A DNA stretch of 64,000 nt, from the IMG/VR virus record IMGVR_UViG_3300005337_000441, positions 62,001 to 126,000 of that record; one strand, written 5' to 3'. The notes below the pieces were generated by a model. The model did no database searches. It was not told the origin of the DNA and worked only from the letters and a program-made list of their open reading frames with translations. Positions 3,322 through 33,050 of this stretch are shown one piece after another (positions within the stretch are counted from its first letter, which is position 1; the number at the start of each line of letters is the position of its first letter). The position numbers were made by a program, and so were the translations under genes.

Positions 3322-4545
3322 TTAGGTGGCAGTTTGCCCGATGAGTGTGCGCAAAGCGATGTACAAGATGATGCTGGTCCGCGTGGACAGCGTCAAACTC
3401 TCGCTGATCTTGCCGTTGCTGGCCTTGATCAACTTGTAACCGATCTTGCGGATCGTCTCGATGTCCGGATCCACCGTGCGGGTGGACAGGTACAGGTTCT
3501 TGAGCTGGTGAAGGATGTACGGGTAGTCCCGCATGTTCTTCGGACTCATGTTGTTTTGGATCAAGTACATGCTCTGTACCACGACCAGTGCGATGAACTC
3601 CGAGATGTCCTTGTGGTACTTCTGATCGTTTTGGTGCTCATGGATCCACTTCAAAGTGGACCTGACCATGCGAAACGACGTGTTCGTGTTGATGCGTGCG
3701 ATGACGCCTACGAGATCGTCCTTGATGAACGTGTGTTCGTCCACGATCGCTTGTTGGATGTAGCCCACGTAGGCTTCAACCGACTTGGTCTTTTCCTTGA
3801 TGGTCTCTTCACCATCGGCGTCCAGGTAAGTGCCCGAGGTCACAGCGACGTTGACGCCCTCCTCGTGCACCTTGTAGAACTCCGCGGTGTAGTTCTTCAC
3901 CAGATCCTTCACACGCCCCTGGGAGTCGTTGATGGCGTAGACGATAGCCACGTCATCCGTGAAGCGAGCCAAAGCTTCCAGGTGGATGCTCTGACGATTG
4001 AGCAGGTTCGTGGCCCGGTACTCCATGACCTTGGCCCAGGAGCCCAGCTGCTTGATCAAGAACTTGTTCGACAGCCGCTGGTAGGCTGCCTGAGCGATCT
4101 TGGGATCGGTCGGGTACTTGAAGTAGTAGCTCATCAGCGCCGCAATGGAGCGGTAGAAGAACACGAGAGCCGTGTCCTTTGCAGCCTGCGTCTTGATGTT
4201 GCCAGGAAGCGTATCTGCCGTGATGAAGCGATGCATCACGTACATGAGCGTCAGGTTGAAGATGTCGCCGGAGATCTTGTACTCGTGGTCGATCGTGGGG
4301 ACCTTGCGGATCGCCTCCGACAACGCCTGGTAGTCGACGTCCAGCACATCGTTGAAGAAGCGCAGCACATCGCTGTCCTTGAACCGAATGACATGTGCTC
4401 CCAGGAGGTTCGAGCCGAAGAACTCGAAGTACTCCGGCGTGGAGTTCACATAGCCGATTTGATACCGATAGACAGCATGCGCCAGCTTCTTGTCGAAGTT
4501 CACGTGGACGAAGTGCTCGTCAAACGTTTGTTTCAAGCCGGCCAT
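3322..4545 (-). CDS. conserved phiKZ-like protein, probably virion-associated
   Basis: 407 aa; strong codon bias; position near terminase and PhuZ (synteny recalled, not searched). Confidence 0.6.
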   Translation of the reverse strand: MAGLKQTFDEHFVHVNFDKKLAHAVYRYQIGYVNSTPEYFEFFGSNLLGAHVIRFKDSDVLRFFNDVLDVDYQALSEAIRKVPTIDHEYKISGDIFNLTLMYVMHRFITADTLPGNIKTQAAKDTALVFFYRSIAALMSYYFKYPTDPKIAQAAYQRLSNKFLIKQLGSWAKVMEYRATNLLNRQSIHLEALARFTDDVAIVYAINDSQGRVKDLVKNYTAEFYKVHEEGVNVAVTSGTYLDADGEETIKEKTKSVEAYVGYIQQAIVDEHTFIKDDLVGVIARINTNTSFRMVRSTLKWIHEHQNDQKYHKDISEFIALVVVQSMYLIQNNMSPKNMRDYPYILHQLKNLYLSTRTVDPDIETIRKIGYKLIKASNGKISESLTLSTRTSIILYIALRTLIGQTAT

Positions 4546-4553: not shown

Positions 4554-5147
4554 CTAGCTCTTGAAGGACTTGCTGATGGCACGGAAGGCAGCGTCACGGG
4601 TGTAGACCACCTCGGCACCGACTTGCTTGGCGAGCTCTTCCACGAGGCCTGCTTTGCGGCTGACCTTGTTGTCTAGGCATTCCAGCGAGATGATGAGCTT
4701 CGGACGTGCCTCCAGTGGCTTGGCGCCTTCAGGCACCAGACCAAAGGTCTGCATCCAGTCCCAGGCAGGACCGAGCCCGTCGTTGTTCTCCAGCTCGCTC
4801 ATGTCCATCGCGTAGACGAACGTGCCCTTGGCCGGTTGATCAGCTTTGCGCTGCATGCCTTGAGCCACAGCCACCATCATGCCGGTGGATTCGTTGGCGT
4901 ACACGAGGTTCAGGGCCTGTGTGTACACACGACCCAGAGGACCATCGAGCACGACCATCGCTTCTTCTTGCTTTGCAGGATTCATCGGAGTGCCGTCCGG
5001 ATTGATCGTGGTCTGGTTGCCAGGCTGGAGCGCAGCGCTGGAAGTGTCTCCCTCGTTGACGTTCTGACCAGACGTCTTCGGGGGCACGATCTCCAACTGA
5101 GGACCGTGGTTGGTGGAGTCACCGGGGGTTACGTCGAAGACAGCCAT
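4554..5147 (-). CDS. hypothetical protein (start MAVFDV...)
   Basis: GGAG RBS upstream of the ATG at 5147, in frame with ORF 4554..5267. Confidence 0.7.
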   Translation of the reverse strand: MAVFDVTPGDSTNHGPQLEIVPPKTSGQNVNEGDTSSAALQPGNQTTINPDGTPMNPAKQEEAMVVLDGPLGRVYTQALNLVYANESTGMMVAVAQGMQRKADQPAKGTFVYAMDMSELENNDGLGPAWDWMQTFGLVPEGAKPLEARPKLIISLECLDNKVSRKAGLVEELAKQVGAEVVYTRDAAFRAISKSFKS

Positions 5148-5591
5148 GCTATCTCGCTCCTTGTACTCATGAGTAAGGGGCAGTGCACCACAAGGGGCGG
5201 TACACCACGTCATAGCATTGAGCTCGCGGAGCCCGCTAGAGCTACTAGGGCGTAGCTCTAGCTCCACCGTGCTGAAGGTGAAAAACTCTCCATGCTTTAT
5301 ATCTAGTGAGGAGCATGGCGACGAACTCTAGCGAGAGCGTAGCGACGTCGAAGTGAGGATACCGGAGGTAGCCGAACGAGACCACACGGAGGGCGGAGCC
5401 CTCCTTAGTTCCCCCTCAGGATACCGCCTGTTTCCAGTAGATCTAAATATTTACTAAAAAATTCCACAGCGCAATGATGCGTAGTGGGGCCAACCCTGCA
5501 CCTACACCAATGGCGACTTGCCGGGTGTGGGTCAGGATCCCGCTATGCCCTCTCGGTGTGGATTTGGGGGCTTTTCTAACGTGACCACGGT

Positions 5592-5608
5592 CACACATAC
5601 TTAACATG
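5592..5608 (+). promoter_or_regulatory. class-1 (putative early) promoter variant CACACATACT-N5-TG
   Basis: Matches the recurrent intergenic motif; lies upstream of the SLT and PhuZ genes. Confidence 0.65.
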
Positions 5609-6190: not shown

Positions 6191-7159
6191 ATGCGAATGA
6201 AACTCTACGCCTGCGGCGGTGCTGGCATCAACACGGTCAAGCAGTTTGCCCCGTTCAACGGTCAAGCCAATCCGGGCTTTGCCACGATCGAAACCGTCTT
6301 CATCGACACGAGCCGCTCCAACCTGGACAGCAGCATCCCCGAGCAGATGACCTACCTGGTCCAAGAGCTCGACGGTTCGGGCAAGCGCCGTGCCACGAAC
6401 CATGCCGCTCTGTCCGAGAGCATCAACGAGATCCTGCTGGAACACCGTCCTGGCGACATCAACATCATCGTGCACTCTGCCGGCGGTGGCTCGGGCTCGG
6501 TGATCGGCCCGCTACTCACCAACGAACTGCTGGGTCGCGAGCAACTCGTCATCGTCCTGGCCATCGGTTCGACCTCTTCGAAGATCGAGACCGAGAACAC
6601 CAAGAAGACGCTGCAGTCGCTGGAATCGATCAGCCAGCGCCGCTCGATGCCGGTGTGCGTGTACTACCGCGAGAACACGCTGGAAAAGCCCCGTGGCGAC
6701 ATCGACCGCGATGTGTCCACTGCCATCTCGCTGATGACGGCCATCTTCTCGGGCCAGAACCGCGAGTTCGACACCGAAGACCTGCGCAACTTCCTGAACT
6801 ACCCGCGCGTCACGAGCTACCCGGCCAAGCTGTCCTACCTGGACCTGTTTGCCAAGGACATCGACCTGGACACCAAGAACGAGGCCATCGTCTCGCTCAT
6901 CACGCTGTCCAACGGTGAAGTCCCCACCGAAGTGCCTCAGCACGTCGAGTACCAGGCCACGGGTTACCTGCACGAGGCTGCGTTCAAGGTGGTCAAGCAA
7001 TCCATGCCGATCCACACGGCCGTGATCGCCGGTCACTTCAGCAAGCTCATCGGTCGCCTGGACAAGCGTCTGGCCGAGTTCGCTGAAATCCGCTCCACCG
7101 TGCACGAGAAGTCCATCCTCGGCTCCGCCTCCACGACCGACGACGGTATGGTGCTGTAA
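6191..7159 (+). CDS. phuZ: PhuZ phage tubulin
   Basis: 322 aa; CGGAG, IDTS, GSGK, GGGSGS tubulin signature, DTEDL, short acidic tail DDGMVL. Confidence 0.95.
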   Translation: MRMKLYACGGAGINTVKQFAPFNGQANPGFATIETVFIDTSRSNLDSSIPEQMTYLVQELDGSGKRRATNHAALSESINEILLEHRPGDINIIVHSAGGGSGSVIGPLLTNELLGREQLVIVLAIGSTSSKIETENTKKTLQSLESISQRRSMPVCVYYRENTLEKPRGDIDRDVSTAISLMTAIFSGQNREFDTEDLRNFLNYPRVTSYPAKLSYLDLFAKDIDLDTKNEAIVSLITLSNGEVPTEVPQHVEYQATGYLHEAAFKVVKQSMPIHTAVIAGHFSKLIGRLDKRLAEFAEIRSTVHEKSILGSASTTDDGMVL

Positions 7160-12508: not shown

Positions 12509-12844
12509 ATGGGAGAGGTCAATACAAGTAGCATAGGGACCCAGTTCTACCACCACAAGGAAAAGTCACCCACCGTGGTGCACATCCATGCAAAGAGAGT
12601 AGGACGGGTACTGTATCGCAACGTTGTCAACGTATATCGTCTCACTGAGGATCAGGATCCGAAAGATGCCAAGCTTGTCATGTTCGGCATCACGATCCGC
12701 TCCAGTCAGGCGTACTTCAACCTCGGAGATGTGAGGGTTAATCCCGGGGACCGACTTTTTGCTCAGGTGATCAAACCGGGGCTCGCACTTTCTGCAACGA
12801 TCCACGGAGTGCCTGTGGATAACTTTGCAGCCTTGTTTGACTGA
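12509..12844 (+). CDS. hypothetical small beta-rich protein
   Basis: FYHH...PGDRLF. Confidence 0.6.
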   Translation: MGEVNTSSIGTQFYHHKEKSPTVVHIHAKRVGRVLYRNVVNVYRLTEDQDPKDAKLVMFGITIRSSQAYFNLGDVRVNPGDRLFAQVIKPGLALSATIHGVPVDNFAALFD

Positions 12845-12851
12845 GGAACAC

Positions 12852-13742
12852 ATGTCCAAGACCTACATTCTCCATCATCGAGACAGCGATGGGTACTGCG
12901 CTGCGCTGGCAGCCTATGTCGCTGGCCTGACCGAGGCTTGGCAACCTGGCAATCTTGCCAACGCGATCTACATCGACGTGCAGTACGGGGAAGCTTTCCC
13001 GAACATCGAGTTGACCGACAAGGACCGGGTCTACATCCTGGACTTCTCTTACGACCGCGCCACCCTCGACGCCGTCAACGCAAAAGTCAAAGACCTTGTC
13101 GTGATCGATCATCACAAGACAGCGGCCAAGGCGCTTCAAGGTGCTTCGTACGCGATCTTTGACATGACCAAGTCCGGCTCGGACCTTGCCTGGGAATACT
13201 TCCATGGTCACGTCCCGATGAACTGGATGCTCCAGCTCGTCTCCGAGTACGACATGGGTGTGCGTGACCACAAGGAAGCCCAGTGGTTGGAGAACACCAT
13301 GGTCGCCCACCCTCGCAAGGGTGACCTCGTGTTCTGGAAAAAGATCATGGATGATCCCGTCGAACTCCAAGAAGTCCTGGAGATCGGCAGAGGCATCCAG
13401 TTCAACAACGACCAGATCCTTCGCAACATCGTTGACAAGAAGTACTACAGGGAGATCCAGTGGTCTGGATATCGTGGCGCCGTGGTGAACTCCGCCATCC
13501 TGCGCAACGAGATCGCGTACGCCGTGCTAGACGCCAGGCCTGACCTGGAGTTCGTGTGCACGACACGCATCTTCCCTTCTGGTCAGATGAAGCTGGCACT
13601 GCGTGCTCGCAAAGAAGACAAGCACATCGACATCTCCACGATCGCCGAGTACCTGGGCGGCGGTGGACATCGGGCCTCTGCCAGCGTGGTTGTTTCTCTC
13701 AGCCAATCGCTGGCATTGCAGCGTGAGTGGTACTCCGTTTAA
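12852..13742 (+). CDS. DHH/DHHA1 phosphoesterase (nanoRNase NrnB-like)
   Basis: HHRDSDG, ILDFS, IDHHKT, GGGGHRASA motifs; GAGGA RBS. Confidence 0.88.
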   Translation: MSKTYILHHRDSDGYCAALAAYVAGLTEAWQPGNLANAIYIDVQYGEAFPNIELTDKDRVYILDFSYDRATLDAVNAKVKDLVVIDHHKTAAKALQGASYAIFDMTKSGSDLAWEYFHGHVPMNWMLQLVSEYDMGVRDHKEAQWLENTMVAHPRKGDLVFWKKIMDDPVELQEVLEIGRGIQFNNDQILRNIVDKKYYREIQWSGYRGAVVNSAILRNEIAYAVLDARPDLEFVCTTRIFPSGQMKLALRARKEDKHIDISTIAEYLGGGGHRASASVVVSLSQSLALQREWYSV

Positions 13743-13751
13743 CCCACAGAC

Positions 13752-13799
13752 ATAGATGCAGGGGCTTCGCGCTCCTGCATCTATACTGCTTCCTTTTTT
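13752..13799 (+). terminator. intrinsic terminator
   Basis: ATAGATGCAGGGGC/GCTCCTGCATCTAT followed by a T-run. Confidence 0.75.
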
Positions 13800-13810
13800 G
13801 AAAGACCAAC

Positions 13811-14260
13811 ATGTGGAAACATGGATTCCTGATTGCGGAGAACAAACAGAAGCAGCGCCCCATGTTGGTGGAGTTCCGTGCGTTCTTCCGCTTTGAAACG
13901 CACCACCTCTACCGCAAGTGCGGCAGTGCGGCGCCGGTGTATGTCTACATCTTGAAAATCGACGGCTATCGTGAAGTCGTCTCGATGTTCTACGCTCAAA
14001 ACTACTTCTGGTTCGGTAATGATCAGATCTTCCTGGAGCCTGGTGAGAAACTTATCATCGCCACCTCCGGCATGAAGAAGAAAGAGGATGCTTTCCTCAT
14101 GGAGAGTATCTCTGGTATCCTTCACGGTGAAGATGACGAACTCAAGCGTTACGACAAGCAGTTCCGTATCGTCAGAAGCTCAGAGATCAAACCGATCGAA
14201 AGCTACCGGCACAAAGTCCATCAGCCGAGGAGGAAGAAAGATGTCGCCCTCATCACCTGA
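13811..14260 (+). CDS. hypothetical protein
   Basis: 149 aa ORF. Confidence 0.65.
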   Translation: MWKHGFLIAENKQKQRPMLVEFRAFFRFETHHLYRKCGSAAPVYVYILKIDGYREVVSMFYAQNYFWFGNDQIFLEPGEKLIIATSGMKKKEDAFLMESISGILHGEDDELKRYDKQFRIVRSSEIKPIESYRHKVHQPRRKKDVALIT

Positions 14261-14600
14261 GTTCGACCAACTCGATCTGCTCGTGCGTCGCATCGATGCA
14301 CTGCCTCCTTCAACGTTCGATGCGATCATGTACACCGACGACGATGATCGCAAGTGGATCCAAGCCCGCATGATCATGTCTGGCGGCTTGCAAGCCAGCG
14401 AGCAGGTCAAAGAGCTGATGACGGAGTTGGTGCGTCTTGTACAGCGCCTCTTCGTCACTGAGAAAAGCCGCTTTGAAAACTTCACGTGGTCACTCTACAT
14501 GAACGGCTACCGTGAACTCACAGCGGGACGGGACCTCAAGGACAAGCAGCACCATGCGCTGTATACACCGTACAACAAATGGTACGTCAGCTTCGGTTGA
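14241..14600 (+). CDS. hypothetical protein
   Basis: GAGGAGG RBS before ATG 14241. Confidence 0.7.
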   Translation: MSPSSPEFDQLDLLVRRIDALPPSTFDAIMYTDDDDRKWIQARMIMSGGLQASEQVKELMTELVRLVQRLFVTEKSRFENFTWSLYMNGYRELTAGRDLKDKQHHALYTPYNKWYVSFG

Positions 14601-14605
14601 TGTAG

Positions 14606-14644
14606 GATGTAAAAACTTGTGTCGTTTTGGTATATCTATTGGAG
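14606..14644 (+). promoter_or_regulatory. class-2 promoter-like motif GATGT-A5-CTT-N11-GTATATCTATTGGAG
   Basis: Near-identical copy with the same 11-nt spacer at 30816-30855, upstream of chimallin. Confidence 0.65.
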
Positions 14645-14649
14645 CGAAA

Positions 14650-15390
14650 TGAGCCACTACTCATGGAGCTTCAAAACAAATGCCCGGAAGCGATTTCGGG
14701 AAGTGGCTAGTCAAACGAGGAAGTCGGAAAGCCTCGTTCGAACAGCTGCGGCACATGACGTTCCGCATGGCTCATACCGGTATAGCAACCACTCGTTTCA
14801 CCCTTCTGGATGAAAACATCGTCCTCGGCGAGAACGCTACCCGAAAAGAGCTGCATCTGCCTGACGAGCCCGGGGAGCAATCCCCGGGCATGTGTTCCGT
14901 TCTTTAACAACTGGAAAAGAAGCCCATGAAAGCCAAGACTCGACTTGGCGCTGGATTCGATCGGTGATAAACCATCTACCAGCCAACGTTCATGGGAACT
15001 GACAGGTGCATTGCCCTCAGCGAGGGATGTGTGCAAAAAACCTGTCGGGGTGCCTAGCGGACTCGTTCGCGAGATGGTGAAAAAGCAGGGAGAAGTTGAG
15101 AAAACCGCTGCGGCGGCTGCTCCTTCTCCCTGCCTGGCATTTAGAGAATCGAATAAAGGACGTGCTTGGGGTGCCGAGACCAGACTCGGTGATGGGTTTT
15201 CGCGAATCACATTCAACCCCCCAAGAAGTAGCGCGTAGGGCGGACGAGAGTCGTTGCCTGATTATCGTGCTGCGGTACAAGCGCCGGGAGTTGCCCAACA
15301 TCCTCCGGCCATGCCCCCTGCCTCTGCATCATCTACCTCGACCGCGCTGGTCCAGGTTCGGTGCGGTTGGCAGGGGCGTGTGCTTTTTTT
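14650..15390 (+). ncRNA. candidate large structured RNA (segment A, possibly two RNAs)
   Basis: No convincing ORF; many helices (14868-14889 GCAA tetraloop, 14955-14961/15148-15154, 15085-15133, GAC-GAGA-GTC); ends in a helix plus T7; shares a module with 15796-16290. Confidence 0.55.
14899..14909 (+). promoter_or_regulatory. boxA (NusB/NusE-binding) consensus match GTTCTTTAACA
   Basis: Exact match to GYTCTTTAANA in a non-coding context. Confidence 0.45.
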
Positions 15391-15528
15391 GCCGTCTGCT
15401 ATTGGTATGGACACCCTGTTAGCTCGGAGAAAGAAAAATGCTCTACCCTTCTTCTTATCGGCAGCTGCTTGCTGCTCTTTCGTTCATATCGCTGCCGGCC
15501 GTGGGGCCGCCGATTGCAACGAAAGACC

Positions 15529-15795
15529 ATGCAGCAAACAACCAAGGAACATCGAGCGCTTCGGCGTCATGAACGTGCACGCCTTCTGAAAAAGCGTGCC
15601 AACTATTGGGGAGGTTGGGTTGCTTTACCTGACCGCGCAGGTAAACTCCTGCACACCCCTTGTAATTGCAGCTGCTTTATGTGTGGCAACCCGCGCAAAT
15701 ACTTCGGTAACGCGCGAGATGCTCTCACTGTAGCAGAGCAACGAGTCACCCAGCGCCAGCTTGGTGAGCACTTCACTCCCGACGAAAGGGAGTGA
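15529..15795 (+). CDS. 88-aa Arg-rich protein with CxCSCxxCGNPRK putative Zn-binding motif
   Basis: In-frame ATG at 15529; RALRRHERARLLKKR followed by HTPCNCSCFMCGNPRKY. Confidence 0.75.
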   Translation: MQQTTKEHRALRRHERARLLKKRANYWGGWVALPDRAGKLLHTPCNCSCFMCGNPRKYFGNARDALTVAEQRVTQRQLGEHFTPDERE

Positions 15796-16290
15796 GAGAT
15801 CCCCTAATTCTGAAACATGTCTCATCGGTGGTGGTTCATTCACCTTCTGGTAATATGACCGCCGTATAGCCGAGAATGTGGGAAGGAGCCAAACCCGTCT
15901 TCGGACGGGAGGTCGTTGAGCACACAAGGGATCTTCACCCATGTTCACGCCCCGGCGTGTCATAGGGTCACGGCTCAAGCGGAACCACATACCTAGGGGC
16001 CCCTGGGCGTGCAGTTGTTACGGGGCAACTGTCAATGGTGGACTGAAAGGTCATTCCGATATAGCTGCTGACAGCGACCTGGACATGAATACCGACAGGG
16101 TCAGCCCGTGTCGGACAAAAAGGCTTGGTGGTGGCTGAGATGCAGACTCAGTGCGGACTCACAGTAGGCCGCGGAAGACCCAAGAAGTGTCGCATGCGTT
16201 GTTAGCGCGCGAGGCGGCGCAAACCTTCATCGCTGGAAGATACTGGAGCAGTTGTCTCCATGACTTTCAGGATGAGGGAGTGCGCTTTTT
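15796..16290 (+). ncRNA. candidate large structured RNA (segment B)
   Basis: GAGATCCC/GGGATCTT closing helix, C(UUCG)G hairpin 15894-15909, CATGTTCA/TGGACATG helix, GAAA-loop hairpin, terminal helix plus T5. Confidence 0.55.
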
Positions 16291-16311
16291 GTTTTACCTC
16301 TTTTGGACCTC

Positions 16312-16821
16312 ATGAGTTTCGAACAAACCCTCGGCAGTAAAGACTGGCTGAATCAAAACGAAACCGCTCTTCGTGAGATGTTTCCTGAAACATGGACTCA
16401 CGTTGAGAACATGAAACTCCTTCCGATCATGTACAGGCTCAAGACCTTGGGCGTGGACTGGCGTGAAGAGAATGAAATCCCGGAGATTCTGACGTTCTTC
16501 AGGAACGCCGGCGTCTACGCCATGAATGCTTCCAAGCAGGTCATGCGAAACCACAAGCATCTCGAATTCGAGATGACCTACAAACCGCAGGATCGTCGCC
16601 TGAGCGAAGTGATCCCGGATGAAACCGAAGAGAAGGAAGACAAAGTCACGATCCCCAATCCGGTCGGAACCATCGCGTGGTTCTTGCTGCTGTTCGGTTG
16701 GATTGGTGGCTTTGTGCTCGCCAAGGGCTTTTGGTCCACGGTGTGTTGTCTGTGTCCTCTGTGGGCCTGGTACTTGGTTGTCGAGCGTCTCTTCCAACTC
16801 TGGGGCATGATTCCCCTGTGA
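16312..16821 (+). CDS. hypothetical protein with C-terminal TM segments
   Basis: Hydrophobic C-terminus; followed by a hairpin. Confidence 0.7.
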   Translation: MSFEQTLGSKDWLNQNETALREMFPETWTHVENMKLLPIMYRLKTLGVDWREENEIPEILTFFRNAGVYAMNASKQVMRNHKHLEFEMTYKPQDRRLSEVIPDETEEKEDKVTIPNPVGTIAWFLLLFGWIGGFVLAKGFWSTVCCLCPLWAWYLVVERLFQLWGMIPL

Positions 16822-16870
16822 CGGCATACTACAGCGGGGTCATGCGCCCCGCTGTAGCTGCTTATGCCGT
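16821..16870 (+). terminator. hairpin with ACGGCATA/TATGCCGT outer arms
   Basis: Inner stem CTACAGCGGGG/CCCCGCTGTAG. Confidence 0.7.
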
Positions 16871-16893
16871 GTCGGCTTAGAAAAGATTTCAGC

Positions 16894-16910
16894 AACACAT
16901 ACTTTATGTG
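16894..16910 (+). promoter_or_regulatory. class-1 promoter variant AACACATACT-N5-TG
   Basis: Motif variant directly after the terminator. Confidence 0.6.
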
Positions 16911-16943
16911 ACCCCTAACTCAAATCTTTCTCGGAGGGAGAAG

Positions 16944-17381
16944 ATGGATCAAGGTAAGGAAGCAATGAAGTTCTACGTGGTCACCGGTCACGTCATTGTG
17001 GCCGCTGCAAGACCAAAGGCACTGTCTCCTGTGCGGGAACTGGTGGTGGAGGTTGACGTCACGCACCGCCACGTCTTGGAACAGGACTTCAGACTGCATC
17101 GCTATTTGATGGCCTACGTCACGGAGCACGCAACCGAGTCGTTCATCCGTCACCTCAAGGCCGACAAGACGACGGCCAAGTCGATCGGGGGCACCCAGTG
17201 GCGTGTGTCCATTCGCGATCAAGAGTTCAAGCTTTTCCTCACCAGAGCGATGGCCGAGGAATACCTGAACAACCCTGAGCGGCCCAGTGGCCCTCATGAC
17301 CGTTTCACTTTCATGCGGGAGATGATCCTGGAAAACTATGACGACAGCACGAACAGCGTTATGCCTGCGAATCACGTCTAG
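16944..17381 (+). CDS. hypothetical protein
   Basis: GGAGGGAG RBS before ATG 16944. Confidence 0.7.
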   Translation: MDQGKEAMKFYVVTGHVIVAAARPKALSPVRELVVEVDVTHRHVLEQDFRLHRYLMAYVTEHATESFIRHLKADKTTAKSIGGTQWRVSIRDQEFKLFLTRAMAEEYLNNPERPSGPHDRFTFMREMILENYDDSTNSVMPANHV

Positions 17382-17631
17382 CGAACGTGAGACCTTGGAA
17401 AAGGTCAAGCCTTGGAAGGTGTCGGGCAACGCAGATCAAATCCAACAACAGCTGCCTCAACTGCTCAGCCAATTTTTGGTGGAGCCGCTGGAGAGCAGCA
17501 AACGACTGGGCCAAGACATCTACGTTGACAACAAAGTCACGGCCCGTTTCGAGCACCAAGAACACGCCAGAGAGCTGTACCATCTGCTCTCGGGCAATAA
17601 GATGGTTGCATTCCGCAACTGGCTCGATTGA
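17338..17631 (+). CDS. hypothetical protein (start uncertain)
   Basis: Fills the gap between neighbours; coding-like. Confidence 0.5.
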   Translation: MTTARTALCLRITSSERETLEKVKPWKVSGNADQIQQQLPQLLSQFLVEPLESSKRLGQDIYVDNKVTARFEHQEHARELYHLLSGNKMVAFRNWLD

Positions 17632-17649
17632 AAACCTAGGGAGTTTGTC

Positions 17650-17904
17650 ATGTTCTTTGATTGGCTGATGAATCTGTTGCCTGAATTTCACGGAGACATC
17701 CGGATCTTTCTGGCGATGGTCTATTTCGCCATGGGGGCGTTTGTGCTGCTGCATGCATACGGCGCCTCCAAGTACTACACCCGCCAATGGCATCAAGGTC
17801 AAGAACCGACCGTGATGTTGTTTGCACTCATCCTCTGCATCCTGCTCTGGCCGATTCTCATGACCAGGAAGGATGTCTCACTACCGAGGCCCAAACTCAA
17901 ATGA
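17650..17904 (+). CDS. small 2-TM membrane protein
   Basis: GGGAG RBS; two hydrophobic segments. Confidence 0.7.
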   Translation: MFFDWLMNLLPEFHGDIRIFLAMVYFAMGAFVLLHAYGASKYYTRQWHQGQEPTVMLFALILCILLWPILMTRKDVSLPRPKLK

Positions 17905-18248
17905 CGCGAGCACTGATCCAAGCGGAGGTCGAGCTGGAGTACTTCCTCGCCCTCAACAGCATGATAGCCAACACGGAGCAGCTCACTCCGTTTGGTCCTT
18001 TCCCGTCCAGGGAAGACGCTCTGGCGTTTTACGACGCCGAGAAGGTCGAGCCGTATACCGAACCCGGTGAGAACGGCTTCACAGGTCTACCAACGACCTG
18101 GGGTAAGACCTTCCGTAAAGGTGGTCCGTTGGAGTGGATGAACCCACTCACGGATACAGAGCGTGAAGCTGCGGAACCACCTTTTGGCCGCGGTGTGCAT
18201 GAACGCTTGGGTCGGACTTACAACGTTCAGATTCTGAATCGCTTCTAA
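17901..18248 (+). CDS. hypothetical protein
   Basis: ATGA overlap with the upstream stop; GAGG RBS. Confidence 0.7.
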   Translation: MTRALIQAEVELEYFLALNSMIANTEQLTPFGPFPSREDALAFYDAEKVEPYTEPGENGFTGLPTTWGKTFRKGGPLEWMNPLTDTEREAAEPPFGRGVHERLGRTYNVQILNRF

Positions 18249-18303
18249 ACCAGAGAGGGTGTTACCCCTCTCGCCACTAACCTTGTTCTTAGGAAGAACA
18301 TCA

Positions 18304-18861
18304 ATGTCTTCGCAATACGACCGTGGTACCGTCGAACATGTTCTTCAGCACCTCCGGGAATGGGGAGTGCCAGACCGTGTCGTCGAGACAGTGACCATCG
18401 AAGTGGGAAAGAGACACCCGCCTGGCAGTGTCGGTGTGATTCGCTACTACGGTAATCTCTTCGCAGAGTACAAGTACTTTGAAGGGATCGAACAACCTCT
18501 GTTCCGCTTTCGGCAATCCGCCAAAGTGCACGCAGTTCAGAGAATCGAAGCGCAAGAAGACGGAACGCTTCGGGCAAAGTTTCGCTTGATGCTCAGCCCG
18601 CATCATACCCCCGCCTTGATGGTTGAGGGTCCAGAAGCTACTCCCGAGCTCCATGACTTCCTGGTCAAGGAATGTCTGAGTGGTCTGTCAGACAAACCCG
18701 GACACCGAGTGATGAAGGCAGCAGGCGCCTTCTTCCAAGGTGGTAGACATCAGCCCAGAGGTGGCTGGTTCTATGTGGAGTTCGCACATTCACGACATGC
18801 TCAGGCATTTGTGGACTTTGTGAACGCCAACTACCACCCCAAGCAAACAGAGCCTGCATGA
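18304..18861 (+). CDS. hypothetical protein, paralog of 20710-21264
   Basis: Shared Y.RG.V.HVL..LREWG.P and LFAEY.YF.GIEQPLF. Confidence 0.8.
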   Translation: MSSQYDRGTVEHVLQHLREWGVPDRVVETVTIEVGKRHPPGSVGVIRYYGNLFAEYKYFEGIEQPLFRFRQSAKVHAVQRIEAQEDGTLRAKFRLMLSPHHTPALMVEGPEATPELHDFLVKECLSGLSDKPGHRVMKAAGAFFQGGRHQPRGGWFYVEFAHSRHAQAFVDFVNANYHPKQTEPA

Positions 18862-28195: not shown

Positions 28196-28459
28196 ATGCC
28201 GGGACAATTCTCGCAGCTCATTCAGGCATTGACGATCTTGGACCGGTACGAAGTCATGGACCTCAGTGCCGGCATGGTCGAAGGTGAGATCGAGGTCGAA
28301 CTGATGGAAGACATCAAGCACAGCGATGCGCTGGTGTTGAAAGAACTCGGCTGGAAGAACTGGGGTCGTCGGTGGCGGCAAACTGAACGCGAGTTCGGTT
28401 TGATCGAAGGGATGTTTGATACACGTCCGAATCAACCCACGGGCATCTTGCCGCCGTGA
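28196..28459 (+). CDS. hypothetical protein
   Basis: Abuts the upstream stop; terminator follows. Confidence 0.65.
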   Translation: MPGQFSQLIQALTILDRYEVMDLSAGMVEGEIEVELMEDIKHSDALVLKELGWKNWGRRWRQTEREFGLIEGMFDTRPNQPTGILPP

Positions 28460-28463
28460 CAGC

Positions 28464-28498
28464 AAAAAGAGGAGCCCACCGGCCCCTCTTTTTTTTTT
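28464..28498. terminator. bidirectional terminator
   Basis: A5-GAGGAGC..GCCCCTC-T-run between convergent genes. Confidence 0.7.
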
Positions 28499-28501
28499 GC
28501 C

Positions 28502-29326
28502 TCAAAGGCCAGGATTGATCTGAACCTTGATGAACCGCTGGTGCGAGTTCACATCGTTCATGATGGCGATGCGCGACCACTTCTCCTTCAAGAAGGTGAT
28601 GTACATGTCCTCAGCGTCCACGCAGTTGTCCACGTACTGCTTGACCATGCCGAGGTCTTGACCACCGCTCAGGTAGGCCTTGTCCAGCTTCACGATCAGT
28701 TCGTTGTAGATGTGGCTCTTCACTGCGAGTTTGCACAGCTCCGCAAAGTCGAAGTAGGACTTGGGGTTGATGTTCCGCAGGTTCTCTTCGTTGGCCACCA
28801 AGCAACGCAGGTGGTACGCGGCTGTGATGCGACGGAAGTTGCGGATCACGACCGTGTTGTAGCCCACGAGGTCACAGGTGGCCTCAGACACCGGCGGGAT
28901 GTTGGATGCTGCGTCACCCACACGCTGGCCAGCGCCAGTCAAGTCAGTGATGCCGCTCGGGCCCACGGTCCCGACACCTGCTCCGAACGCGGAAAAACTC
29001 ACCGCGTAGGGTAAATATCCTATGGACTTCACTGCAACGATCTGACGGTTATTCACCATCTCAGGAGGAATCTCGATCATGACCGTGAAGTCGTCGATGT
29101 ACTCCTCACGTAAGCCTTCGATGGGGACGATGACTTCGTTGCTGGAGTAGATGTTTGCATCCACCAATACTCGGGGTCGAATGACCTTGACCAGGAGTTG
29201 CTCATCCAGACTGATCGGAGCGGAAACGCTCCTCCAATTGGGACGATGATCCAGGAAGGCAATCTTCAGGATCTCGCGCGGGATCGTCCGCTTGATGGTG
29301 TCAAGCGCCTTGGCGATGGCGTCCAT
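28502..29326 (-). CDS. conserved phiKZ-like protein (putative structural)
   Basis: 274 aa; GAGG RBS; minus-strand gene between DNA polymerase and chimallin, as recalled for phiKZ-like phages. Confidence 0.65.
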   Translation of the reverse strand: MDAIAKALDTIKRTIPREILKIAFLDHRPNWRSVSAPISLDEQLLVKVIRPRVLVDANIYSSNEVIVPIEGLREEYIDDFTVMIEIPPEMVNNRQIVAVKSIGYLPYAVSFSAFGAGVGTVGPSGITDLTGAGQRVGDAASNIPPVSEATCDLVGYNTVVIRNFRRITAAYHLRCLVANEENLRNINPKSYFDFAELCKLAVKSHIYNELIVKLDKAYLSGGQDLGMVKQYVDNCVDAEDMYITFLKEKWSRIAIMNDVNSHQRFIKVQINPGL

Positions 29327-29341
29327 AGGGAAGGTACCTCA

Positions 29342-29611
29342 ATGTTTGTTTCTGCACAAGAATTCCTCGACAAGACTCAACAACTTGGCTTTGACGTTCG
29401 GGAATTCCAATCGACTATGTGGAACCTGACGGAGAATCCACACTCATTGGATCAGGCAAAGATCCAGGGCCGTTCGCCCTTCATCGTGCTTTATGCCGAT
29501 ACTGATTGCATCTCGGTGACGTTCATCGAGAAAAAGCATCTTCCGATCGCTGAGGATGACGACAACACGGTCGTCGACGCGTTCGAGCTCCTCAAACACG
29601 TAGCCCACTAA
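29342..29611 (+). CDS. hypothetical protein
   Basis: AAGG RBS; ATG 29342. Confidence 0.55.
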   Translation: MFVSAQEFLDKTQQLGFDVREFQSTMWNLTENPHSLDQAKIQGRSPFIVLYADTDCISVTFIEKKHLPIAEDDDNTVVDAFELLKHVAH

Positions 29612-29669
29612 ACCACACAGCACACGACCCCCCGGAGCTCCAACGGCTCCGGGGGGTCCCTATGCAGTT

Positions 29670-30764
29670 CTATAGCGCCATCACTTCACCGATGAAGGCA
29701 TCCACCTCCAGCCCAAGGGTTGAAGGCAGAATGGTTTTGAGCATGTTCTCGCGATCCAGGTACTGACAGGTGCGTTGCAGCTGATGGATGAGCGTCGTGT
29801 TGGAATTCACGCCGCCCTCACCGCCGAGCTGGATCAAGAAGGCCATGATCTCAAAGCGCGTGATGTTCAACGCCCACCAGGCTTGACGAGTTCTCGCCAT
29901 GTCCGGCATGATCAGGCTCACCTGCATGTCCTTCTCGAAGATGCTCGGGATGTTTTGCAGGTATGCGTAGTAGCTACCCTTGTAGTCTTCGAGCCGCTTC
30001 AGGATCTCCCTGAGCACATTGTCCATCTTGTCGCCATAGTCGACCACCAAGAAAGCGTGCTTCCTCGTGGCGCGACTCATGTCGATGTCGTGGTACAAGT
30101 TGTACATGCGGTTCATGATCACGTAGTCGATGTGACTGTAGAGCATGGACGGCAGCACGTACATGTGTACGAAATGTGTCACACCCAGCAGTCCCTGAGA
30201 CTCACCCTTGGAATCCAGTCGAGCTGACTGATCCATCAGGAACCCTCGGTACATGCACAGGAGCATGGGCACATTGATCGAGATGGCGCAGAACCCTTGA
30301 CCTGTGCTGGCGTTCTTACCGTCCGGTAAAAGAAGCCCAAAGTCACTGATTTGATGCGACAACACTTTGATAGGTTGCAACGCCTTCCAATTCTGGACGG
30401 CGTCAAACGGGTTGAAGTAGTCTTCGTTGTAGAAGATCAGTTCTTTGTTTCCAGGACCGTAGAACACTCCGTCATGAAAGACACCGTAGTCGATGTCGCT
30501 CGTGAAGCGGAAGTGCTTGGCCACATAGGGCGACCTCGCAGAGATCACCTCCATGAAACGTTCGATGTCGTATTCAACGGGCACACTGGCTGTCATCAGC
30601 AGACGACACAGCAAGTGATTGCCCTGCACAGCGAACACCCGATTGTTGTAGTAGTTCACAATCGTGGTGATTTCTCGCTGGTAAGTTCGCTGGATCAACT
30701 CGAACCCGGGGGGTCTGACCACGGGCAAGTTGCCTGCGAACTCGCTGGCAAAGAGGTTATACAT
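29670..30764 (-). CDS. conserved phiKZ-like protein divergent from chimallin (gp52-like position)
   Basis: 364 aa; GAGGAG RBS; CTGATCCTATG motif upstream. Confidence 0.7.
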   Translation of the reverse strand: MYNLFASEFAGNLPVVRPPGFELIQRTYQREITTIVNYYNNRVFAVQGNHLLCRLLMTASVPVEYDIERFMEVISARSPYVAKHFRFTSDIDYGVFHDGVFYGPGNKELIFYNEDYFNPFDAVQNWKALQPIKVLSHQISDFGLLLPDGKNASTGQGFCAISINVPMLLCMYRGFLMDQSARLDSKGESQGLLGVTHFVHMYVLPSMLYSHIDYVIMNRMYNLYHDIDMSRATRKHAFLVVDYGDKMDNVLREILKRLEDYKGSYYAYLQNIPSIFEKDMQVSLIMPDMARTRQAWWALNITRFEIMAFLIQLGGEGGVNSNTTLIHQLQRTCQYLDRENMLKTILPSTLGLEVDAFIGEVMAL

Positions 30765-30815
30765 GAGCTCCTCAGCATGTCTATCATAGGATCAGGAGGA
30801 GTCCATCGAAGTGGT

Positions 30816-30855
30816 GATGTAAAAAACTTCCTCCCTTTCCGTATATCTATTGGAG
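30816..30855 (+). promoter_or_regulatory. class-2 promoter-like motif upstream of chimallin
   Basis: GATGT-A6-CTT-N11-GTATATCTATTGGAG, twin of 14606-14644. Confidence 0.65.
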
Positions 30856-30954
30856 ACAAGTGCTCCTTACATCCACCTGGAGGCAACTCCAGGTGGAGAT
30901 ATAAGGTTCACTACGTTGTCTCGGGATCAAATCCCGTTTCTAACGTTGTTCAGC

Positions 30955-30971
30955 CCCTTATACTTTAACTG
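30955..30971 (+). promoter_or_regulatory. class-1 promoter variant CCCTTATACT-N5-TG
   Basis: TATACT-N5-TG with TCTAA upstream at the usual spacing. Confidence 0.5.
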
Positions 30972-31077
30972 GAAAAAGGTAGCTGATGACTTGCTTCCCC
31001 CTTGTACACGGTGGGGTGTACCGTGTAGTGTGTTTTAGCTAAAACGTTCTTAGAAAACCTCTTTGGAGAAAATTGCA

Positions 31078-32937
31078 ATGGCAATCCACGACGACCAAAA
31101 CGACGGCAACCGTACCTCCGCTGCAAGCGCGCAGGGCGGTTTCAACGCCTTCGACAGCTTCCACACCGGCGGCCTGTTCGCTGCCCCCATCAGCCAGGGC
31201 ATGGGCTCCGAGTTCTACACCAAGGTGAAGCAGGGCCTGCTGGACCTGTACAAGGACGTCAACCCCAACGTCAAGATCGCCCTGATCGACCTGGACAACG
31301 TCAACAACCCCGCTTTTGACTTCTCCAACATCATCGTCGCCGCGCAGCTGAAGAACGCTCCGGAACTCGGCGTCGCCTACCACATCCTGGCCCTGGAAGC
31401 CACCGGCGAGAAGCTGGGCCCGGTCATGGACACCATCAACAACCAGACCATCGAGATCCAGCGCGTCACCTCCGACACCATCGACACCGCCCTGGTCAAG
31501 GCCGCCGCCGCCAAGGTCGAAGCTGCCTTCCCCGGCGTCGCCAGCCACTGGGTCGATGCGACCGTGGTGCCCGACACCTTCAACCCCGATGACAAGACCG
31601 CCATGCACAAGCTGGCGCTGTTCACCGGCCTGGCCTGCTCCACCGAGCTGCAGATCCACTCGCCTGACTTCCGTGACCTGAACCTGGCTCACATCAAGAA
31701 CGAAGGCCAGCTGACCGTGCGCCTGGACTTCGGCCGCCAGCAAGTCGAGAACATCGTCGGCCAGCCGCAGCGCTCCGACGTCAGCGGCTCCCTGACCAGC
31801 CGCAAGAACGTCCCGGGCCGTCAGGCTCAGGTCAACACCGGTGACAAGGAAGCTCACGTCGCCCGCGTCGGCGGCTTCATCGATCTGGTCTGGGCGCCGC
31901 GCGGCGGTGACACGGGCTTCAACCCGTGGCTCGCCCAGCAGCAGCAACAGCAAATGGCCATGAACCCGATGCTCACGCAGAAGTACGCTGCGCGTCTGGT
32001 CCTGACCGACATCCAATCCCGCTTCGCCTACACGCCTTCGCTGGTGCTGCTGGCCGTGGCCACCTCGCTGACCGCGAGCGACAACAACAACTGGTTCCAA
32101 GCCTACCGTCCCACTCCGTCGGCCGGCAAGGGTTCCATCGACCTCAACGACATCGGCGCTCTGAACATCGAGGCCAACATCTCCAACGAACCCGGCGGCT
32201 TCGGCTCGCGCATCAACACGAAGGGCGAGGAATTCCAGCTGTCGCAGCTGGGCACGCTGATCGGCATGATGGTGCAACCGGGCATGATGCTGGCCATCGA
32301 CGTGCCGGAAGCTGGTCCGCAGTCGTGGTACCTGTCCATGTTCGCCAACGCGGCGAACGGCAGCCAGGCCGCCTACGACGCCATCTACAACGCCGCCAAC
32401 GAGCTGACCAACGGCGCCTTCAGCCGCCACTTCGCTGCTGGCACGCAGATGTTCGTCGACACGAACAACCGCGTCCACCTCGGCAACTGGACGGACCGTC
32501 TGGGCAACAAGCGCGACATCCGCGACATCGACTACCTGGCCGTCGCCAACCTGCTGGGCGACTCCAACCCGTCGGCGATCCGCGACTGGAGCGACACGTT
32601 CCTGCGCACCGAGTACCCGCTGCCCCAGCGTCTGGCCGCTCGCAAGCGCATGATCAGCAGCCTCACCGGCGAGACCGCGGTCTTCACCGGCTTCGCTCAG
32701 CGCGTCACCTTCAGCGGCAAGTTCCTGGCCGCCTTCGGTGCTGCTCTGCGTGAAGTCAGCCCGCCGATGCGCGTCACCACCCCGCTGTCGGCTTCCGAGC
32801 TGAGCAACCAGCGCGGCTACGCCGGCTTCGCCGAGCAGGCCATGCTGGCTCCGGGCCAGACGTTCGCCCAGGTCGGCGGCTTCGGCAACGCCAACGCCTA
32901 CGCCGGTTACTTCGGTCCGGCGCAGCGCTGGATGTAA
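31078..32937 (+). CDS. chmA: chimallin, phage nucleus shell protein
   Basis: 619 aa; extreme high-expression codon bias; motifs such as GFIDLVW, DIGALNIE, RVHLG.WTD..G.KRDIRDIDYLA and G.AQRVTF; co-occurs with PhuZ and nvRNAP genes. Confidence 0.88.
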   Translation: MAIHDDQNDGNRTSAASAQGGFNAFDSFHTGGLFAAPISQGMGSEFYTKVKQGLLDLYKDVNPNVKIALIDLDNVNNPAFDFSNIIVAAQLKNAPELGVAYHILALEATGEKLGPVMDTINNQTIEIQRVTSDTIDTALVKAAAAKVEAAFPGVASHWVDATVVPDTFNPDDKTAMHKLALFTGLACSTELQIHSPDFRDLNLAHIKNEGQLTVRLDFGRQQVENIVGQPQRSDVSGSLTSRKNVPGRQAQVNTGDKEAHVARVGGFIDLVWAPRGGDTGFNPWLAQQQQQQMAMNPMLTQKYAARLVLTDIQSRFAYTPSLVLLAVATSLTASDNNNWFQAYRPTPSAGKGSIDLNDIGALNIEANISNEPGGFGSRINTKGEEFQLSQLGTLIGMMVQPGMMLAIDVPEAGPQSWYLSMFANAANGSQAAYDAIYNAANELTNGAFSRHFAAGTQMFVDTNNRVHLGNWTDRLGNKRDIRDIDYLAVANLLGDSNPSAIRDWSDTFLRTEYPLPQRLAARKRMISSLTGETAVFTGFAQRVTFSGKFLAAFGAALREVSPPMRVTTPLSASELSNQRGYAGFAEQAMLAPGQTFAQVGGFGNANAYAGYFGPAQRWM

Positions 32938-33023: not shown

Positions 33024-33050
33024 GTCCGTCAACTTCGGAGAATTACTACC

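What the first reader, a model, noticed from the sequence alone, without database searches (positions are those of the whole stretch)
14606..14644. The ncRNA locus shares a distinctive promoter motif with chimallin
GATGT-A5/6-CTT-N11-GTATATCTATTGGAG occurs at 14606-14644 and 30816-30855, with an identical 15-mer and the same spacer length. A looser copy (AAAAACTC..TATATCTAGTGAG) sits at 5281-5310. Chimallin is an abundant early product, so the inference is that the structured RNA is co-regulated with the nuclear shell and may be abundant.
Basis: partly seen in the sequence, partly recalled or inferred. Interest (0 to 1): 0.7.

Follow-up and report, generated by a model that had tools for sequence, protein, structure and literature searches.

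The report
Chimallin-type promoter shared with structured RNA
A two-part DNA signal in front of the nuclear-shell gene of an uncultivated giant phage also sits in front of a long, highly folded non-coding RNA, and a distant relative has the same arrangement, so it is probably a special phage promoter, though likely not the phage's main early one.

Summary
Sites 14606-14644 and 30816-30855 share GATGTA5-6CTT, an unrelated 11-nt spacer and an identical 15-mer (about 2e-4 extra copies expected). The window is part of a 216-kb metagenomic chimallivirus.

The motif is best read as a promoter:
- It is an A/T tract, 15-19 nt, then TATCTATTGGAG. It has 6-7 copies in the genome, all intergenic.
- It is kept upstream of chimallin in relatives down to about 48-57% chimallin identity.
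- It is followed there by covarying hairpins that begin at UUGGAG.
- In one relative it marks the same three loci: chimallin, the locus after the DHH gene, and the terminase-side cluster.

The RNA after site A (about 14638-15396) has no coding signal and folds strongly (z -6.7). A 92%-identical piece occurs in a rhizosphere metatranscriptome, with compensatory changes in three helices.

The "early, co-regulated" inference is only partly supported. A different motif, CACATATACTT-N4-TG (25 intergenic copies), fits the phiKZ/AR9 early class. Chimallin carries it too, closer to the gene; the RNA locus does not. The shared motif is therefore more likely a second, middle-like class, as at phiKZ gp54. 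No transcription start was mapped.

The parts
14606..14618 (+). Site A upstream block GATGTAAAAACTT (A-tract element)
   Evidence: Read directly. The same block with one extra A is at site B. An A or T tract at this position is kept in all relatives.
14630..14644 (+). Site A core GTATATCTATTGGAG; predicted transcription start in or near TTGGAG
   Evidence: Exact 15-mer, two copies in the genome. It lies 30 nt after the stop codon of the upstream gene, just inside the segment where close relative L100 diverges.
14638..15396 (+). Predicted primary transcript: about 760-nt structured non-coding RNA
   Evidence: No gene called and no GC3 periodicity. MFE z-score -6.7 on the + strand. No Rfam family and no tRNA. 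The ORF at 14680-14907 would be frame-shifted in the relative's RNA.
14675..14883 (.). Part matched by a 212-nt contig of a rhizosphere metatranscriptome (about 92% identical relative)
   Evidence: The differences cluster in three helices and keep the pairing. Nothing else was laid on 12600-18500 or 28400-34300.
14868..14889 (+). G+C-rich hairpin, a possible early stop giving a form of about 250 nt
   Evidence: Seen in the sequence and in the folds. The RNA-run contig ends inside it.
15310..15396 (+). Long hairpin, then T7, then GCCGTC: likely terminator of the RNA
   Evidence: Fold. The tail TTTGCCGTC matches 8 of 9 positions of the genome's recurrent hairpin+TATGCCGTC element.
15529..15795 (+). 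Small gene (88 aa, phrog_4499, function unknown) inside the variable segment
   Evidence: PHROG hit E 3.1e-19. 720 representatives at E <= 1e-3, none close.
14601..16311 (+). Variable segment, the largest gene-poor gap of the genome, carrying site A, the RNA and the small gene
   Evidence: Largest gap in the crude gene call. L100 is 92% identical up to 14600 and then carries a chemoreceptor-like gene instead.
30816..30829 (+). Site B upstream block GATGTAAAAAACTT
   Evidence: The A or T tract is conserved in 8 relatives.
30841..30855 (+). Site B core GTATATCTATTGGAG, distal chimallin promoter
   Evidence: TGGAG is invariant in the first five chimallin loci aligned; in the eight-locus alignment the core is kept in seven and degenerates in the most distant, L108. 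The core is exact in L107.
30852..30896 (+). Two leader hairpins (30852-30866 and 30873-30896) starting at the end of the motif
   Evidence: RNAalifold on 5 relatives: 17 pairs, 10 of them with compensatory double changes. Leader z-score -4.5.
30945..30971 (+). Proximal chimallin promoter of the genome's main (early-type) class: TTTCTAAC..CTTATACTT-N4-TG
   Evidence: Conserved in relatives.
31078..32937 (+). Chimallin gene
   Evidence: Pfam PF25677, E 3.6e-35. 198 relatives at E <= 1e-20; the 120 listed are 44-63% identical.
5281..5311 (+). Site C, loose copy (AAAAACTC-N9-TATATCTAGTGAGG) facing the SLT-PhuZ operon; status uncertain
   Evidence: Spacing is 3 nt shorter and there is no 5' hairpin.
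5430..5466 (-). Site F, T-tract version (TTTTTT-N13-GATCTACTGGAA) pointing to the minus-strand cluster 4554-5147 ... terminase
   Evidence: Relative G001 has a near-perfect copy in the same place and orientation, before the homologous genes.

Best explanation
The repeated sequence is a phage-specific promoter of a minor class, distinct from the genome's main early-type promoter. It consists of an A or T tract, 15-19 variable bases, then T(A/T)ATCTA(T/G)TGGAG. Transcription probably starts in or next to TTGGAG, so the RNA begins with a stem-loop whose 5' arm is UUGGAG. At 30816-30855 it is the distal of two promoters for chimallin. At 14606-14644 it drives a non-coding RNA of about 250 to 760 nt that ends at hairpin terminators. 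Weaker copies precede the terminase-side cluster and at least three other genes. By analogy with phiKZ gp54, which has an early plus a middle promoter, this class is probably read after the first wave of virion-RNAP transcription. Shown here: the motif, its copy number, its positions, its conservation, the covarying hairpins, the non-coding and structured nature of the RNA, and the presence of a relative's RNA in an RNA library. Inferred: that it is a promoter, where the TSS lies, which polymerase reads it, and when.
For: 1. Two identical blocks with an unrelated spacer, far beyond chance.
2. 6 of 6 genome hits are intergenic; 5 point the same way as the next gene and one (C) faces another copy (F). 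About 1.4 hits are expected and only about 12% of the genome is intergenic.
3. The core is kept upstream of chimallin in seven of eight relatives' loci (degenerate in L108), while the A tract is swapped for a T tract in some. That argues for a DNA-level signal.
4. Two hairpins start exactly at the motif's end, and 10 of 17 pairs covary, so the DNA just downstream is transcribed and selected as RNA. A 5' hairpin starting at UUGGAG is also predicted at sites A and G and at the chimallin orthologs.
5. Relative G001 (chimallin 57% identical, DHH 32%) has the motif at chimallin, before the homologs of window genes 4554-5147 and 3322-4545, and after its DHH and 118-aa genes. At the last site it is followed by a 367-nt non-coding stretch (z -5.3) and a strong terminator.
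6. A different motif with 25 intergenic + strand copies has the early-promoter geometry. It lies between site B and the chimallin start, and it is absent after site A.
7. In phiKZ, chimallin has an early-motif TSS and a middle-motif TSS. The middle motif is an A-rich repeat plus TACT about 22 nt upstream of the start (PMC8244752).
Against: No TSS, strand-specific or time-resolved RNA data exist for this phage or its relatives. The RNA-run evidence is one low-depth 212-nt contig without strand, and it starts about 30 nt downstream of the motif. Only two copies are exact. Copies C, D, E, F and G differ at 3-4 core positions, and their tract-to-core spacing varies from 13 to 19 nt. C, D, E and F lack a clear 5' hairpin. 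The AT-rich hexamer ending in C, about 8 nt before a G, resembles the main motif, so this could be a subclass of the same promoter rather than a separate temporal class. phiKZ middle promoters are weakly conserved around the start, unlike this core.
Confidence: 0.6

Rival explanations
1. It is an early promoter read by the injected virion RNA polymerase, either a strong subclass or the true early class. The RNA would then be made together with the first chimallin mRNA.
For: The core is AT-rich (TATATC), and a G lies about 8 nt after its C, as in the main motif. It precedes chimallin, an early product in phiKZ (PMC8244752). Some relatives have a T tract upstream, and phiKZ early promoters have a T-rich element upstream of -19 (PMC8244752).
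Against: Early promoters of these phages are the motif that stands out bioinformatically in dozens of copies (PMC7598289). In this genome that motif is CACATATACTT-N4-TG, with 25 copies, not this one. Chimallin already has that motif proximally, conserved in relatives. vRNAP is reported to be very sensitive to deviations from its consensus (PMC5312081).
Confidence: 0.2
2. The conserved element acts mainly at the RNA level or as a protein-binding operator. One example would be a 5' stem-loop and flanking bases recognised for stability, export from the phage nucleus or translation, with transcription starting elsewhere.
For: TTGGAG forms the 5' arm of a hairpin that is conserved at chimallin and predicted at A and G. 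The chimallin leader is conserved and structured along its whole length.
Against: The A-to-T tract swaps and the unconserved spacer fit DNA recognition, not RNA. At site B there are only about 50 nt between the motif and the start of the divergent gene, and no other conserved element lies there. Site A begins 6 nt after a stop codon and just inside the boundary of a segment absent from a close relative, so the segment needs its own start signal.
Confidence: 0.1
3. It is a host promoter for an extracytoplasmic-function sigma factor of the RpoE/AlgU type (GAACTT-N16-TCTGA, recalled from memory).
For: Sites A and B read AAACTT-N16-TCTATT, with an A-rich stretch upstream. AlgU-type motifs were frequent at infection-specific host TSSs in phiKZ-infected cells (PMC8244752).
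Against: AACTT is not kept in any relative or in the other copies (AAAAAATAA, T7 and others). phiKZ-type infection does not depend on host RNAP (PMC7598289). No sigma-70-like site overlaps A, B or C.
Confidence: 0.04
4. It is a copy-and-paste remnant. The variable segment at 14601-16311 captured the chimallin promoter region by recombination, and the similarity has no function at site A.
For: Site A lies at the edge of a segment that a 92%-identical relative lacks. The two strong copies are more alike within this genome than orthologous chimallin copies are between genomes.
Against: A recent copy would keep the spacer and flanks, but only 4 of 11 spacer bases match and the flanks differ. G001 has its own motif version at the syntenic RNA locus. 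The downstream RNA shows structure-preserving changes.
Confidence: 0.03

Closest known systems
phiKZ middle-class promoters and the dual early/middle promoters of the shell gene PHIKZ054 (Wicke et al. 2021, PMC8244752; review PMC7598289)
   Same: An A-rich or AT-rich element lies some 20-25 nt upstream of the presumed start. The shell gene carries one promoter of the main early type and one of a second type. The arrangement belongs to a nucleus-forming jumbo phage with its own RNA polymerases.
   Different: Here a 12-15-nt core around the presumed start (TATCTATTGGAG) is strongly conserved, even across genomes, whereas phiKZ middle promoters show little conservation there. The tract can be A or T. 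There are only about 6-7 copies, against 28-33 in phiKZ. Timing and polymerase are untested.
Virion-RNAP early promoters of phiKZ-like phages (phiKZ; AR9 AAATATATATTAT-N6-G, PMC5312081)
   Same: An AT-rich hexamer lies a few bases upstream of a G. The signal is phage-specific and not sigma-70-like.
   Different: The defining property, a nearly invariant motif in dozens of copies before early operons, belongs here to another motif (CACATATACTT-N4-TG, 25 copies). The finding's motif has a different sequence and different spacing.
Non-coding RNA candidates of phiKZ and other virulent phages (ONT-cappable-seq, PMC10914365; Grad-seq candidates cited there)
   Same: Abundant short structured transcripts with their own start and a terminator, lying in intergenic or 5'UTR positions of a jumbo phage.
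   Different: The RNA here is much longer (about 250 to 760 nt, against 71-196 nt). It sits at a syntenically conserved locus in two divergent phages. It shares its promoter with the shell gene. It matches no Rfam family.
Phage morons (autonomous modules with their own promoter and terminator; described in PMC10914365)
   Same: The 1.7-kb segment starts with its own promoter-like element, ends its RNA at a terminator, and is replaced by another gene in a 92%-identical relative.
   Different: Its main product appears to be an RNA, not a protein. A counterpart exists at the same place in a distant relative, so it is not simply a recent add-on.

Membership tests
phiKZ-like virion-RNAP early promoters | Nearly invariant AT-rich element of about 10-13 nt, over-represented (tens of copies) upstream of early operons (PMC7598289, PMC5312081) | tested here: not met
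   Only 2 exact and about 5 loose copies. A different motif has 25 intergenic, co-oriented copies.
phiKZ-like virion-RNAP early promoters | Primary 5' end about 6 nt downstream of the element, present within minutes and without protein synthesis | not testable with these tools
   No infection RNA-seq exists. The only RNA evidence is an unstranded metatranscriptome contig.
phiKZ middle-class promoters | A-rich or AT-rich element centred about 22-24 nt upstream of the TSS (PMC8244752, PMC7598289) | tested here: inconclusive
   An A or T tract lies 13-19 nt upstream of the ATCTA core in all copies and relatives. That would put it near -22 to -30 if the start is at TTGGAG, but the TSS is not mapped.
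phiKZ middle-class promoters | Occurs together with an early-type promoter in front of the shell gene | tested here: met
   Both motifs lie upstream of chimallin. The proximal early-type element is recognisable in seven of the eight relatives' loci aligned and the distal core in seven.
Sigma-70 promoters | TTGACA-N16-18-TATAAT with A at position 2 and T at position 6 of the -10 hexamer | tested here: not met
   Consensus scans find no such site overlapping A, B or C.
ECF sigma (RpoE/AlgU-type) promoters | GAACTT-N16/17-TCTGA-like boxes (recalled from memory), expected to be kept where function is kept | tested here: not met
   A and B fit loosely (AAACTT-N16-TCTATT), but the -35-like box is absent from copies C-G and from all relatives.
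Any Rfam RNA family (for the RNA downstream of site A) | Covariance-model match at or near the gathering score | tested here: not met
   No hit in the window at gathering thresholds. The only hit at E <= 1 is a chance snoRNA match at 15358-15543. Nothing meaningful was found in the G001 counterpart.
Moron-like autonomous module | Own promoter and terminator; present or absent between close relatives | tested here: inconclusive
   A promoter-like start and a terminator-like end are predicted. L100 lacks the segment. A distant relative has an analogous RNA locus.

The most novel reading that the evidence does not exclude
Chimalliviruses of this uncultivated clade may carry a dedicated gene for a large (about 370-760 nt), highly structured non-coding RNA of no known family. 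It would be kept at a fixed locus after the DHH gene cluster and transcribed from the same special promoter as the nuclear-shell gene and the terminase-side cluster. That would make it part of a small conserved regulon, with the RNA possibly working in or at the phage nucleus, for example as a scaffold, a decoy or an export or translation regulator.
Probability: 0.3. Interest if true: 0.75.

Novelty: new member of a known kind. Interest (0 to 1): 0.5.

Why it matters
Promoter classes of nucleus-forming jumbo phages are known experimentally for very few cultured phages, and middle-class signals are poorly defined. This clade offers three things:
- a sharply defined second promoter class;
- a conserved dual-promoter design for the shell gene;
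- a small set of co-marked loci that includes a large structured RNA with no known family.

If the RNA is functional, it would be one of the few conserved non-coding genes in Chimalliviridae and a handle on RNA biology around the phage nucleus. If the motif is only a routine promoter, the result still gives usable promoter and terminator models for annotating these metagenomic phages.

Tried and rejected
- Rfam (gathering thresholds on the window; E <= 1 on 14300-16600 and on the G001 counterpart): nothing meaningful. ARAGORN found no tRNA or tmRNA.
- DNA similarity of 14000-16500 and 14550-16350 to 50,697 phage records, near and distant modes: no match.
- Exact 15-mer scan of IMG/VR: 94 single hits on unrelated contigs, in my rough estimate about what chance would give, so not informative.
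- Exact 21-24-mers from the RNA: only the source contig in JGI metagenome contigs, none in GTDB genomes, none in IMG/VR.
- The single-protein chimallin search in IMG/VR found nothing. The alignment-based search worked.
- Homolog search with the 88-aa ORF: no close relative to use as an anchor.
- Reading the motif on the minus strand, as a relative of the abundant motif's reverse complement, was rejected. Sites A, D and G are flanked by + genes, and the abundant motif is consistently + oriented 17-130 nt before + genes.
- The second large 'gap' of my crude gene call (genome 209485-210845) holds a 343-aa ORF and is not non-coding.
- No primary-sequence similarity between the window RNA and the G001 RNA beyond ATTGGAG, so homology of the two RNAs is not shown.
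- Direct and inverted repeats in 14500-16400: nothing notable.

Full report
**What the window is.** The window is bases 62001-126000 of a single 215,768-bp contig with 57% G+C. The contig is a JGI rhizosphere metagenome record. ORF 31078-32937 is chimallin (Pfam PF25677, E 3.6e-35). PhuZ tubulin (6197-7159), a divergent DNA polymerase, an RNAP beta-like subunit and a large terminase are also present. The nearest chimallin among deposited phages is 38% identical (Burkholderia phage FLC9). Metagenomes hold 198 relatives at E <= 1e-20, and the 120 listed are 44-63% identical. This is an uncultivated chimallivirus lineage.

**The observation.**
- Site A: GATGTAAAAACTT (14606-14618), 11 nt, GTATATCTATTGGAG (14630-14644).
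- Site B: GATGTAAAAAACTT (30816-30829), 11 nt, the same 15-mer (30841-30855).
- The spacers agree at 4 of 11 positions and the flanks are unrelated.
- The 15-mer has two copies in the whole genome, against 1.7e-4 further copies expected from composition.

Two conserved blocks around an unconserved spacer of fixed length point to a bipartite recognition site under selection, not a recent duplication.

**Gene context.** A crude codon-bias gene call (GC3 of real genes is about 0.8) shows that 14601-16311 is the largest gene-poor stretch of the genome. It lacks third-position G+C periodicity. Its only convincing gene is an 88-aa ORF at 15529-15795 (phrog_4499, E 3e-19). Site A's upstream block starts 6 nt after the stop codon of a 119-aa gene. 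Sites B and C both lie in divergent intergenic regions. To the left are minus-strand genes: a virion-protein-like gene next to B and the terminase cluster next to C. To the right are plus-strand genes: chimallin after B and SLT-PhuZ after C.

**A second, much more abundant motif.** K-mer enrichment in intergenic DNA found CACATATACTT.
- It has 25 intergenic copies on the + strand, each 17-130 nt before a + gene.
- Its consensus is ttt.aAa-N10-G.CACATATACTT-N4-TG.
- Its AT-rich core would be centred near -10/-11 of the conserved G.
- That geometry matches virion-RNAP early promoters of phiKZ-like phages, for example AR9 AAATATATATTAT-N6-G. These are described as the motif that stands out bioinformatically in every such phage (PMC7598289, PMC5312081).
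- Short distances to some start codons (23-27 nt) force the start to lie right after the motif.

Chimallin has such an element at 30945-30971, between site B and its ATG. SLT-PhuZ has one at 5585-5608. The RNA locus has none.

**The finding's motif is a small family.** A scan for TATCTATTGGAG (up to 3 mismatches) with an A5 or T5 tract 8-32 nt upstream gives six hits, all intergenic, against about 1.4 expected.
- A: 14606-14644, before the non-coding RNA.
- B: 30816-30855, before chimallin.
- C: 5281-5311, + strand.
- F: 5466-5430, minus strand, with a T tract, pointing at the 4554-5147/terminase cluster.
- D: genome 199258-199294, before a Lys/Ala/Pro-rich 350-aa protein.
- G: genome about 44960-45000, before a 174-aa gene.
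- E: a 4-mismatch copy at genome about 51080-51115, before a 163-aa gene (phrog_9746) with one of the highest per-codon codon-bias scores among the genes I inspected.

Tract-to-core spacing varies from 13 to 19 nt.

**Conservation at chimallin.** Loci from relatives keep the synteny DUF7484(-) / 362-aa(-) / 300-400 nt / chimallin(+). In alignments of five and then eight relatives, the intergenic region keeps these elements in order:
- an A or T tract;
- the core, with TGGAG invariant among the first five loci, kept in seven of the eight, and exact in L107;
- a GGAG...CTCC hairpin with a variable loop;
- a second hairpin;
- the block CCCnTTTCTAA;
- the early-type TATACTTTAnnTGAGA;
- a further hairpin, TTAGCTAA and the ribosome-binding site.

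RNAalifold on five sequences predicts 17 pairs, and 10 of them show double compensatory changes. The DNA immediately downstream of the motif is therefore selected as RNA, which places a start at or before TTGGAG. The tract is A-rich in some genomes and T-rich in others, which fits a DNA-level element.

**Conservation of the set of loci.** IMG/VR record G001 (34 kb; chimallin 57% identical) carries the motif three times.
- Before chimallin.
- In the same orientation, 440 nt before the homologs of window genes 4554-5147 and 3322-4545. That copy shares GGTA, a 7-nt tract, ATAGACAGA, N4 and TATATCTATTGGA with the chimallin copy, but with A7 in place of T7.
- After its DHH homolog (E 8e-37) and the homolog of the window's 119-aa gene (E 3e-6), which is syntenic with site A.

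That third copy is followed by 367 nt without an ORF, a z-score of -5.3 and a strong hairpin-plus-T8 terminator. It has no Rfam match. G001 also uses the identical early-type motif (TCACATATACTTTAAGTGG) before SLT-PhuZ. Two phages that have diverged to 32-57% protein identity thus mark the same three loci with their own version of the motif.

**The RNA.**
- Bases 14638-15396 fold with z -6.7 on the + strand, against -5.2 for the reverse complement.
- The stretch ends in a long hairpin, T7 and GCCGTC. A G+C-rich hairpin at 14868-14889 could give a shorter form of about 250 nt.
- A rhizosphere metatranscriptome (30 Mb of contigs) holds a 212-nt contig about 92% identical to roughly 14675-14883.
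- Nothing from that run lies on the other 11.6 kb tested, including chimallin. DNA carry-over is therefore unlikely, and the RNA of that relative is far more abundant or stable than its shell mRNA in that sample.
- I rebuilt the relative's sequence from the reported differences. The substitutions and four indels cluster in three helices and preserve pairing. The changes are CCCGGAA/TTTCGGG to CCAGAA/TTTTGG, GUGGCU/AGCUGC to GUGGUCA/UGACUGC, and GGAUGA/UCGUCC to GGGGCG/UGCCCU.
- The indels would break the only ATG ORF (14680-14907).
- A 92%-identical genomic relative (L100) matches the window up to base 14600 and then carries a chemoreceptor-like gene instead. A 54% relative (L101) does the same. 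The segment is therefore exchangeable, like a moron.
- The window and G001 RNAs share no detectable primary sequence beyond ATTGGAG, so their homology is open.

**Mechanism and class.**
- No sigma-70-like site overlaps A, B or C.
- A and B resemble an ECF-type AAACTT-N16-TCTATT (my recall), but that box is absent from every other copy and every relative.
- phiKZ-type infection is independent of host RNAP (PMC7598289).
- In phiKZ, the shell gene has an early-motif primary TSS and a middle-motif secondary TSS. The middle motif is an A-rich repeat plus TACT about 22 nt upstream of the start (PMC8244752).

The simplest reading is that the 25-copy motif is the virion-RNAP early promoter. The finding's motif would then be a second, middle-like class with an unusually conserved start region that encodes a 5' stem-loop. 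A subclass of early promoters cannot be excluded.

**Verdict.** The promoter reading is well supported by comparative evidence but has no TSS data. "Abundant" has weak direct support. "Co-regulated with early shell synthesis" is only partly supported, because chimallin has an additional early-type promoter that the RNA lacks.

Noticed in passing
window 5594, 7829, 9402, 16896, 26588, 30957, 41410, 48517, 52991, 57959, 62914 (and 14 more in the genome): Abundant intergenic motif ttt.aAa-N10-G.CACATATACTT-N4-TG. It has 25 copies, all + oriented, 17-130 nt before + genes. It is probably the virion-RNAP early promoter of this phage. An identical consensus is used by relative G001 (L140 about 1925-1946).
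   Followed up: partly
window 584(-), 16828(-)/16863(+), 19779, 41379, 48873, 62501/62510(-); more than 20 in the genome: A G+C-rich hairpin immediately followed by the conserved 9-mer TATGCCGTC instead of a U tract. It lies at 3' ends of genes in sense orientation, sometimes on both sides of one hairpin. It could be a non-canonical terminator or processing signal for the phage polymerases. Alternatively it could be a late TATG-type promoter placed after terminators.
   Followed up: partly
L100:2191-3453 and L101:2398-3522: Two relatives (DHH protein 96% and 54% identical) carry a chemoreceptor (MCP)-like gene, with a transmembrane N-terminus, exactly where the window has the RNA segment. No homolog exists in this genome.
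   Followed up: partly
window 5281-5311 (+) and 5466-5430 (-): Two copies of the finding's motif face each other about 130 nt apart in the divergent region between the terminase-side cluster and SLT-PhuZ. If both fire, their transcripts overlap in antisense.
   Followed up: no
window 30784-30789 (minus strand CTATGA): A TATGA element about 20-25 nt before the start of the minus-strand virion-protein-like gene 29670-30764 is conserved in all five relatives aligned. It resembles the phiKZ late promoter T-3ATG+1.
   Followed up: no
window 31005-31045: The chimallin leader downstream of the proximal promoter holds a 9-bp hairpin with a T-rich tail (terminator-like) and a conserved TTAGCTAA block. 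This may be an attenuator or a translational element.
   Followed up: no
window 15796-16311: About 515 nt after the small phrog_4499 gene remain unexplained. There is no ORF with a family hit, only moderate structure (z -2.2), and a GGAG..CTCC hairpin at about 16245-16260.
   Followed up: partly
genome 199329-200381 (L106:629-1681): The gene after motif copy D encodes a 350-aa protein with a Lys/Ala-rich, histone-H1-like N-terminal part and a proline-rich linker. It has no family hit apart from a sub-threshold PhiKZ_MCP match.
   Followed up: partly
whole contig: The protein database lists this exact chimallin on a 257,852-bp contig, longer than the 215,768-bp record held here. The genome used for the copy counts may therefore be incomplete.
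   Followed up: no
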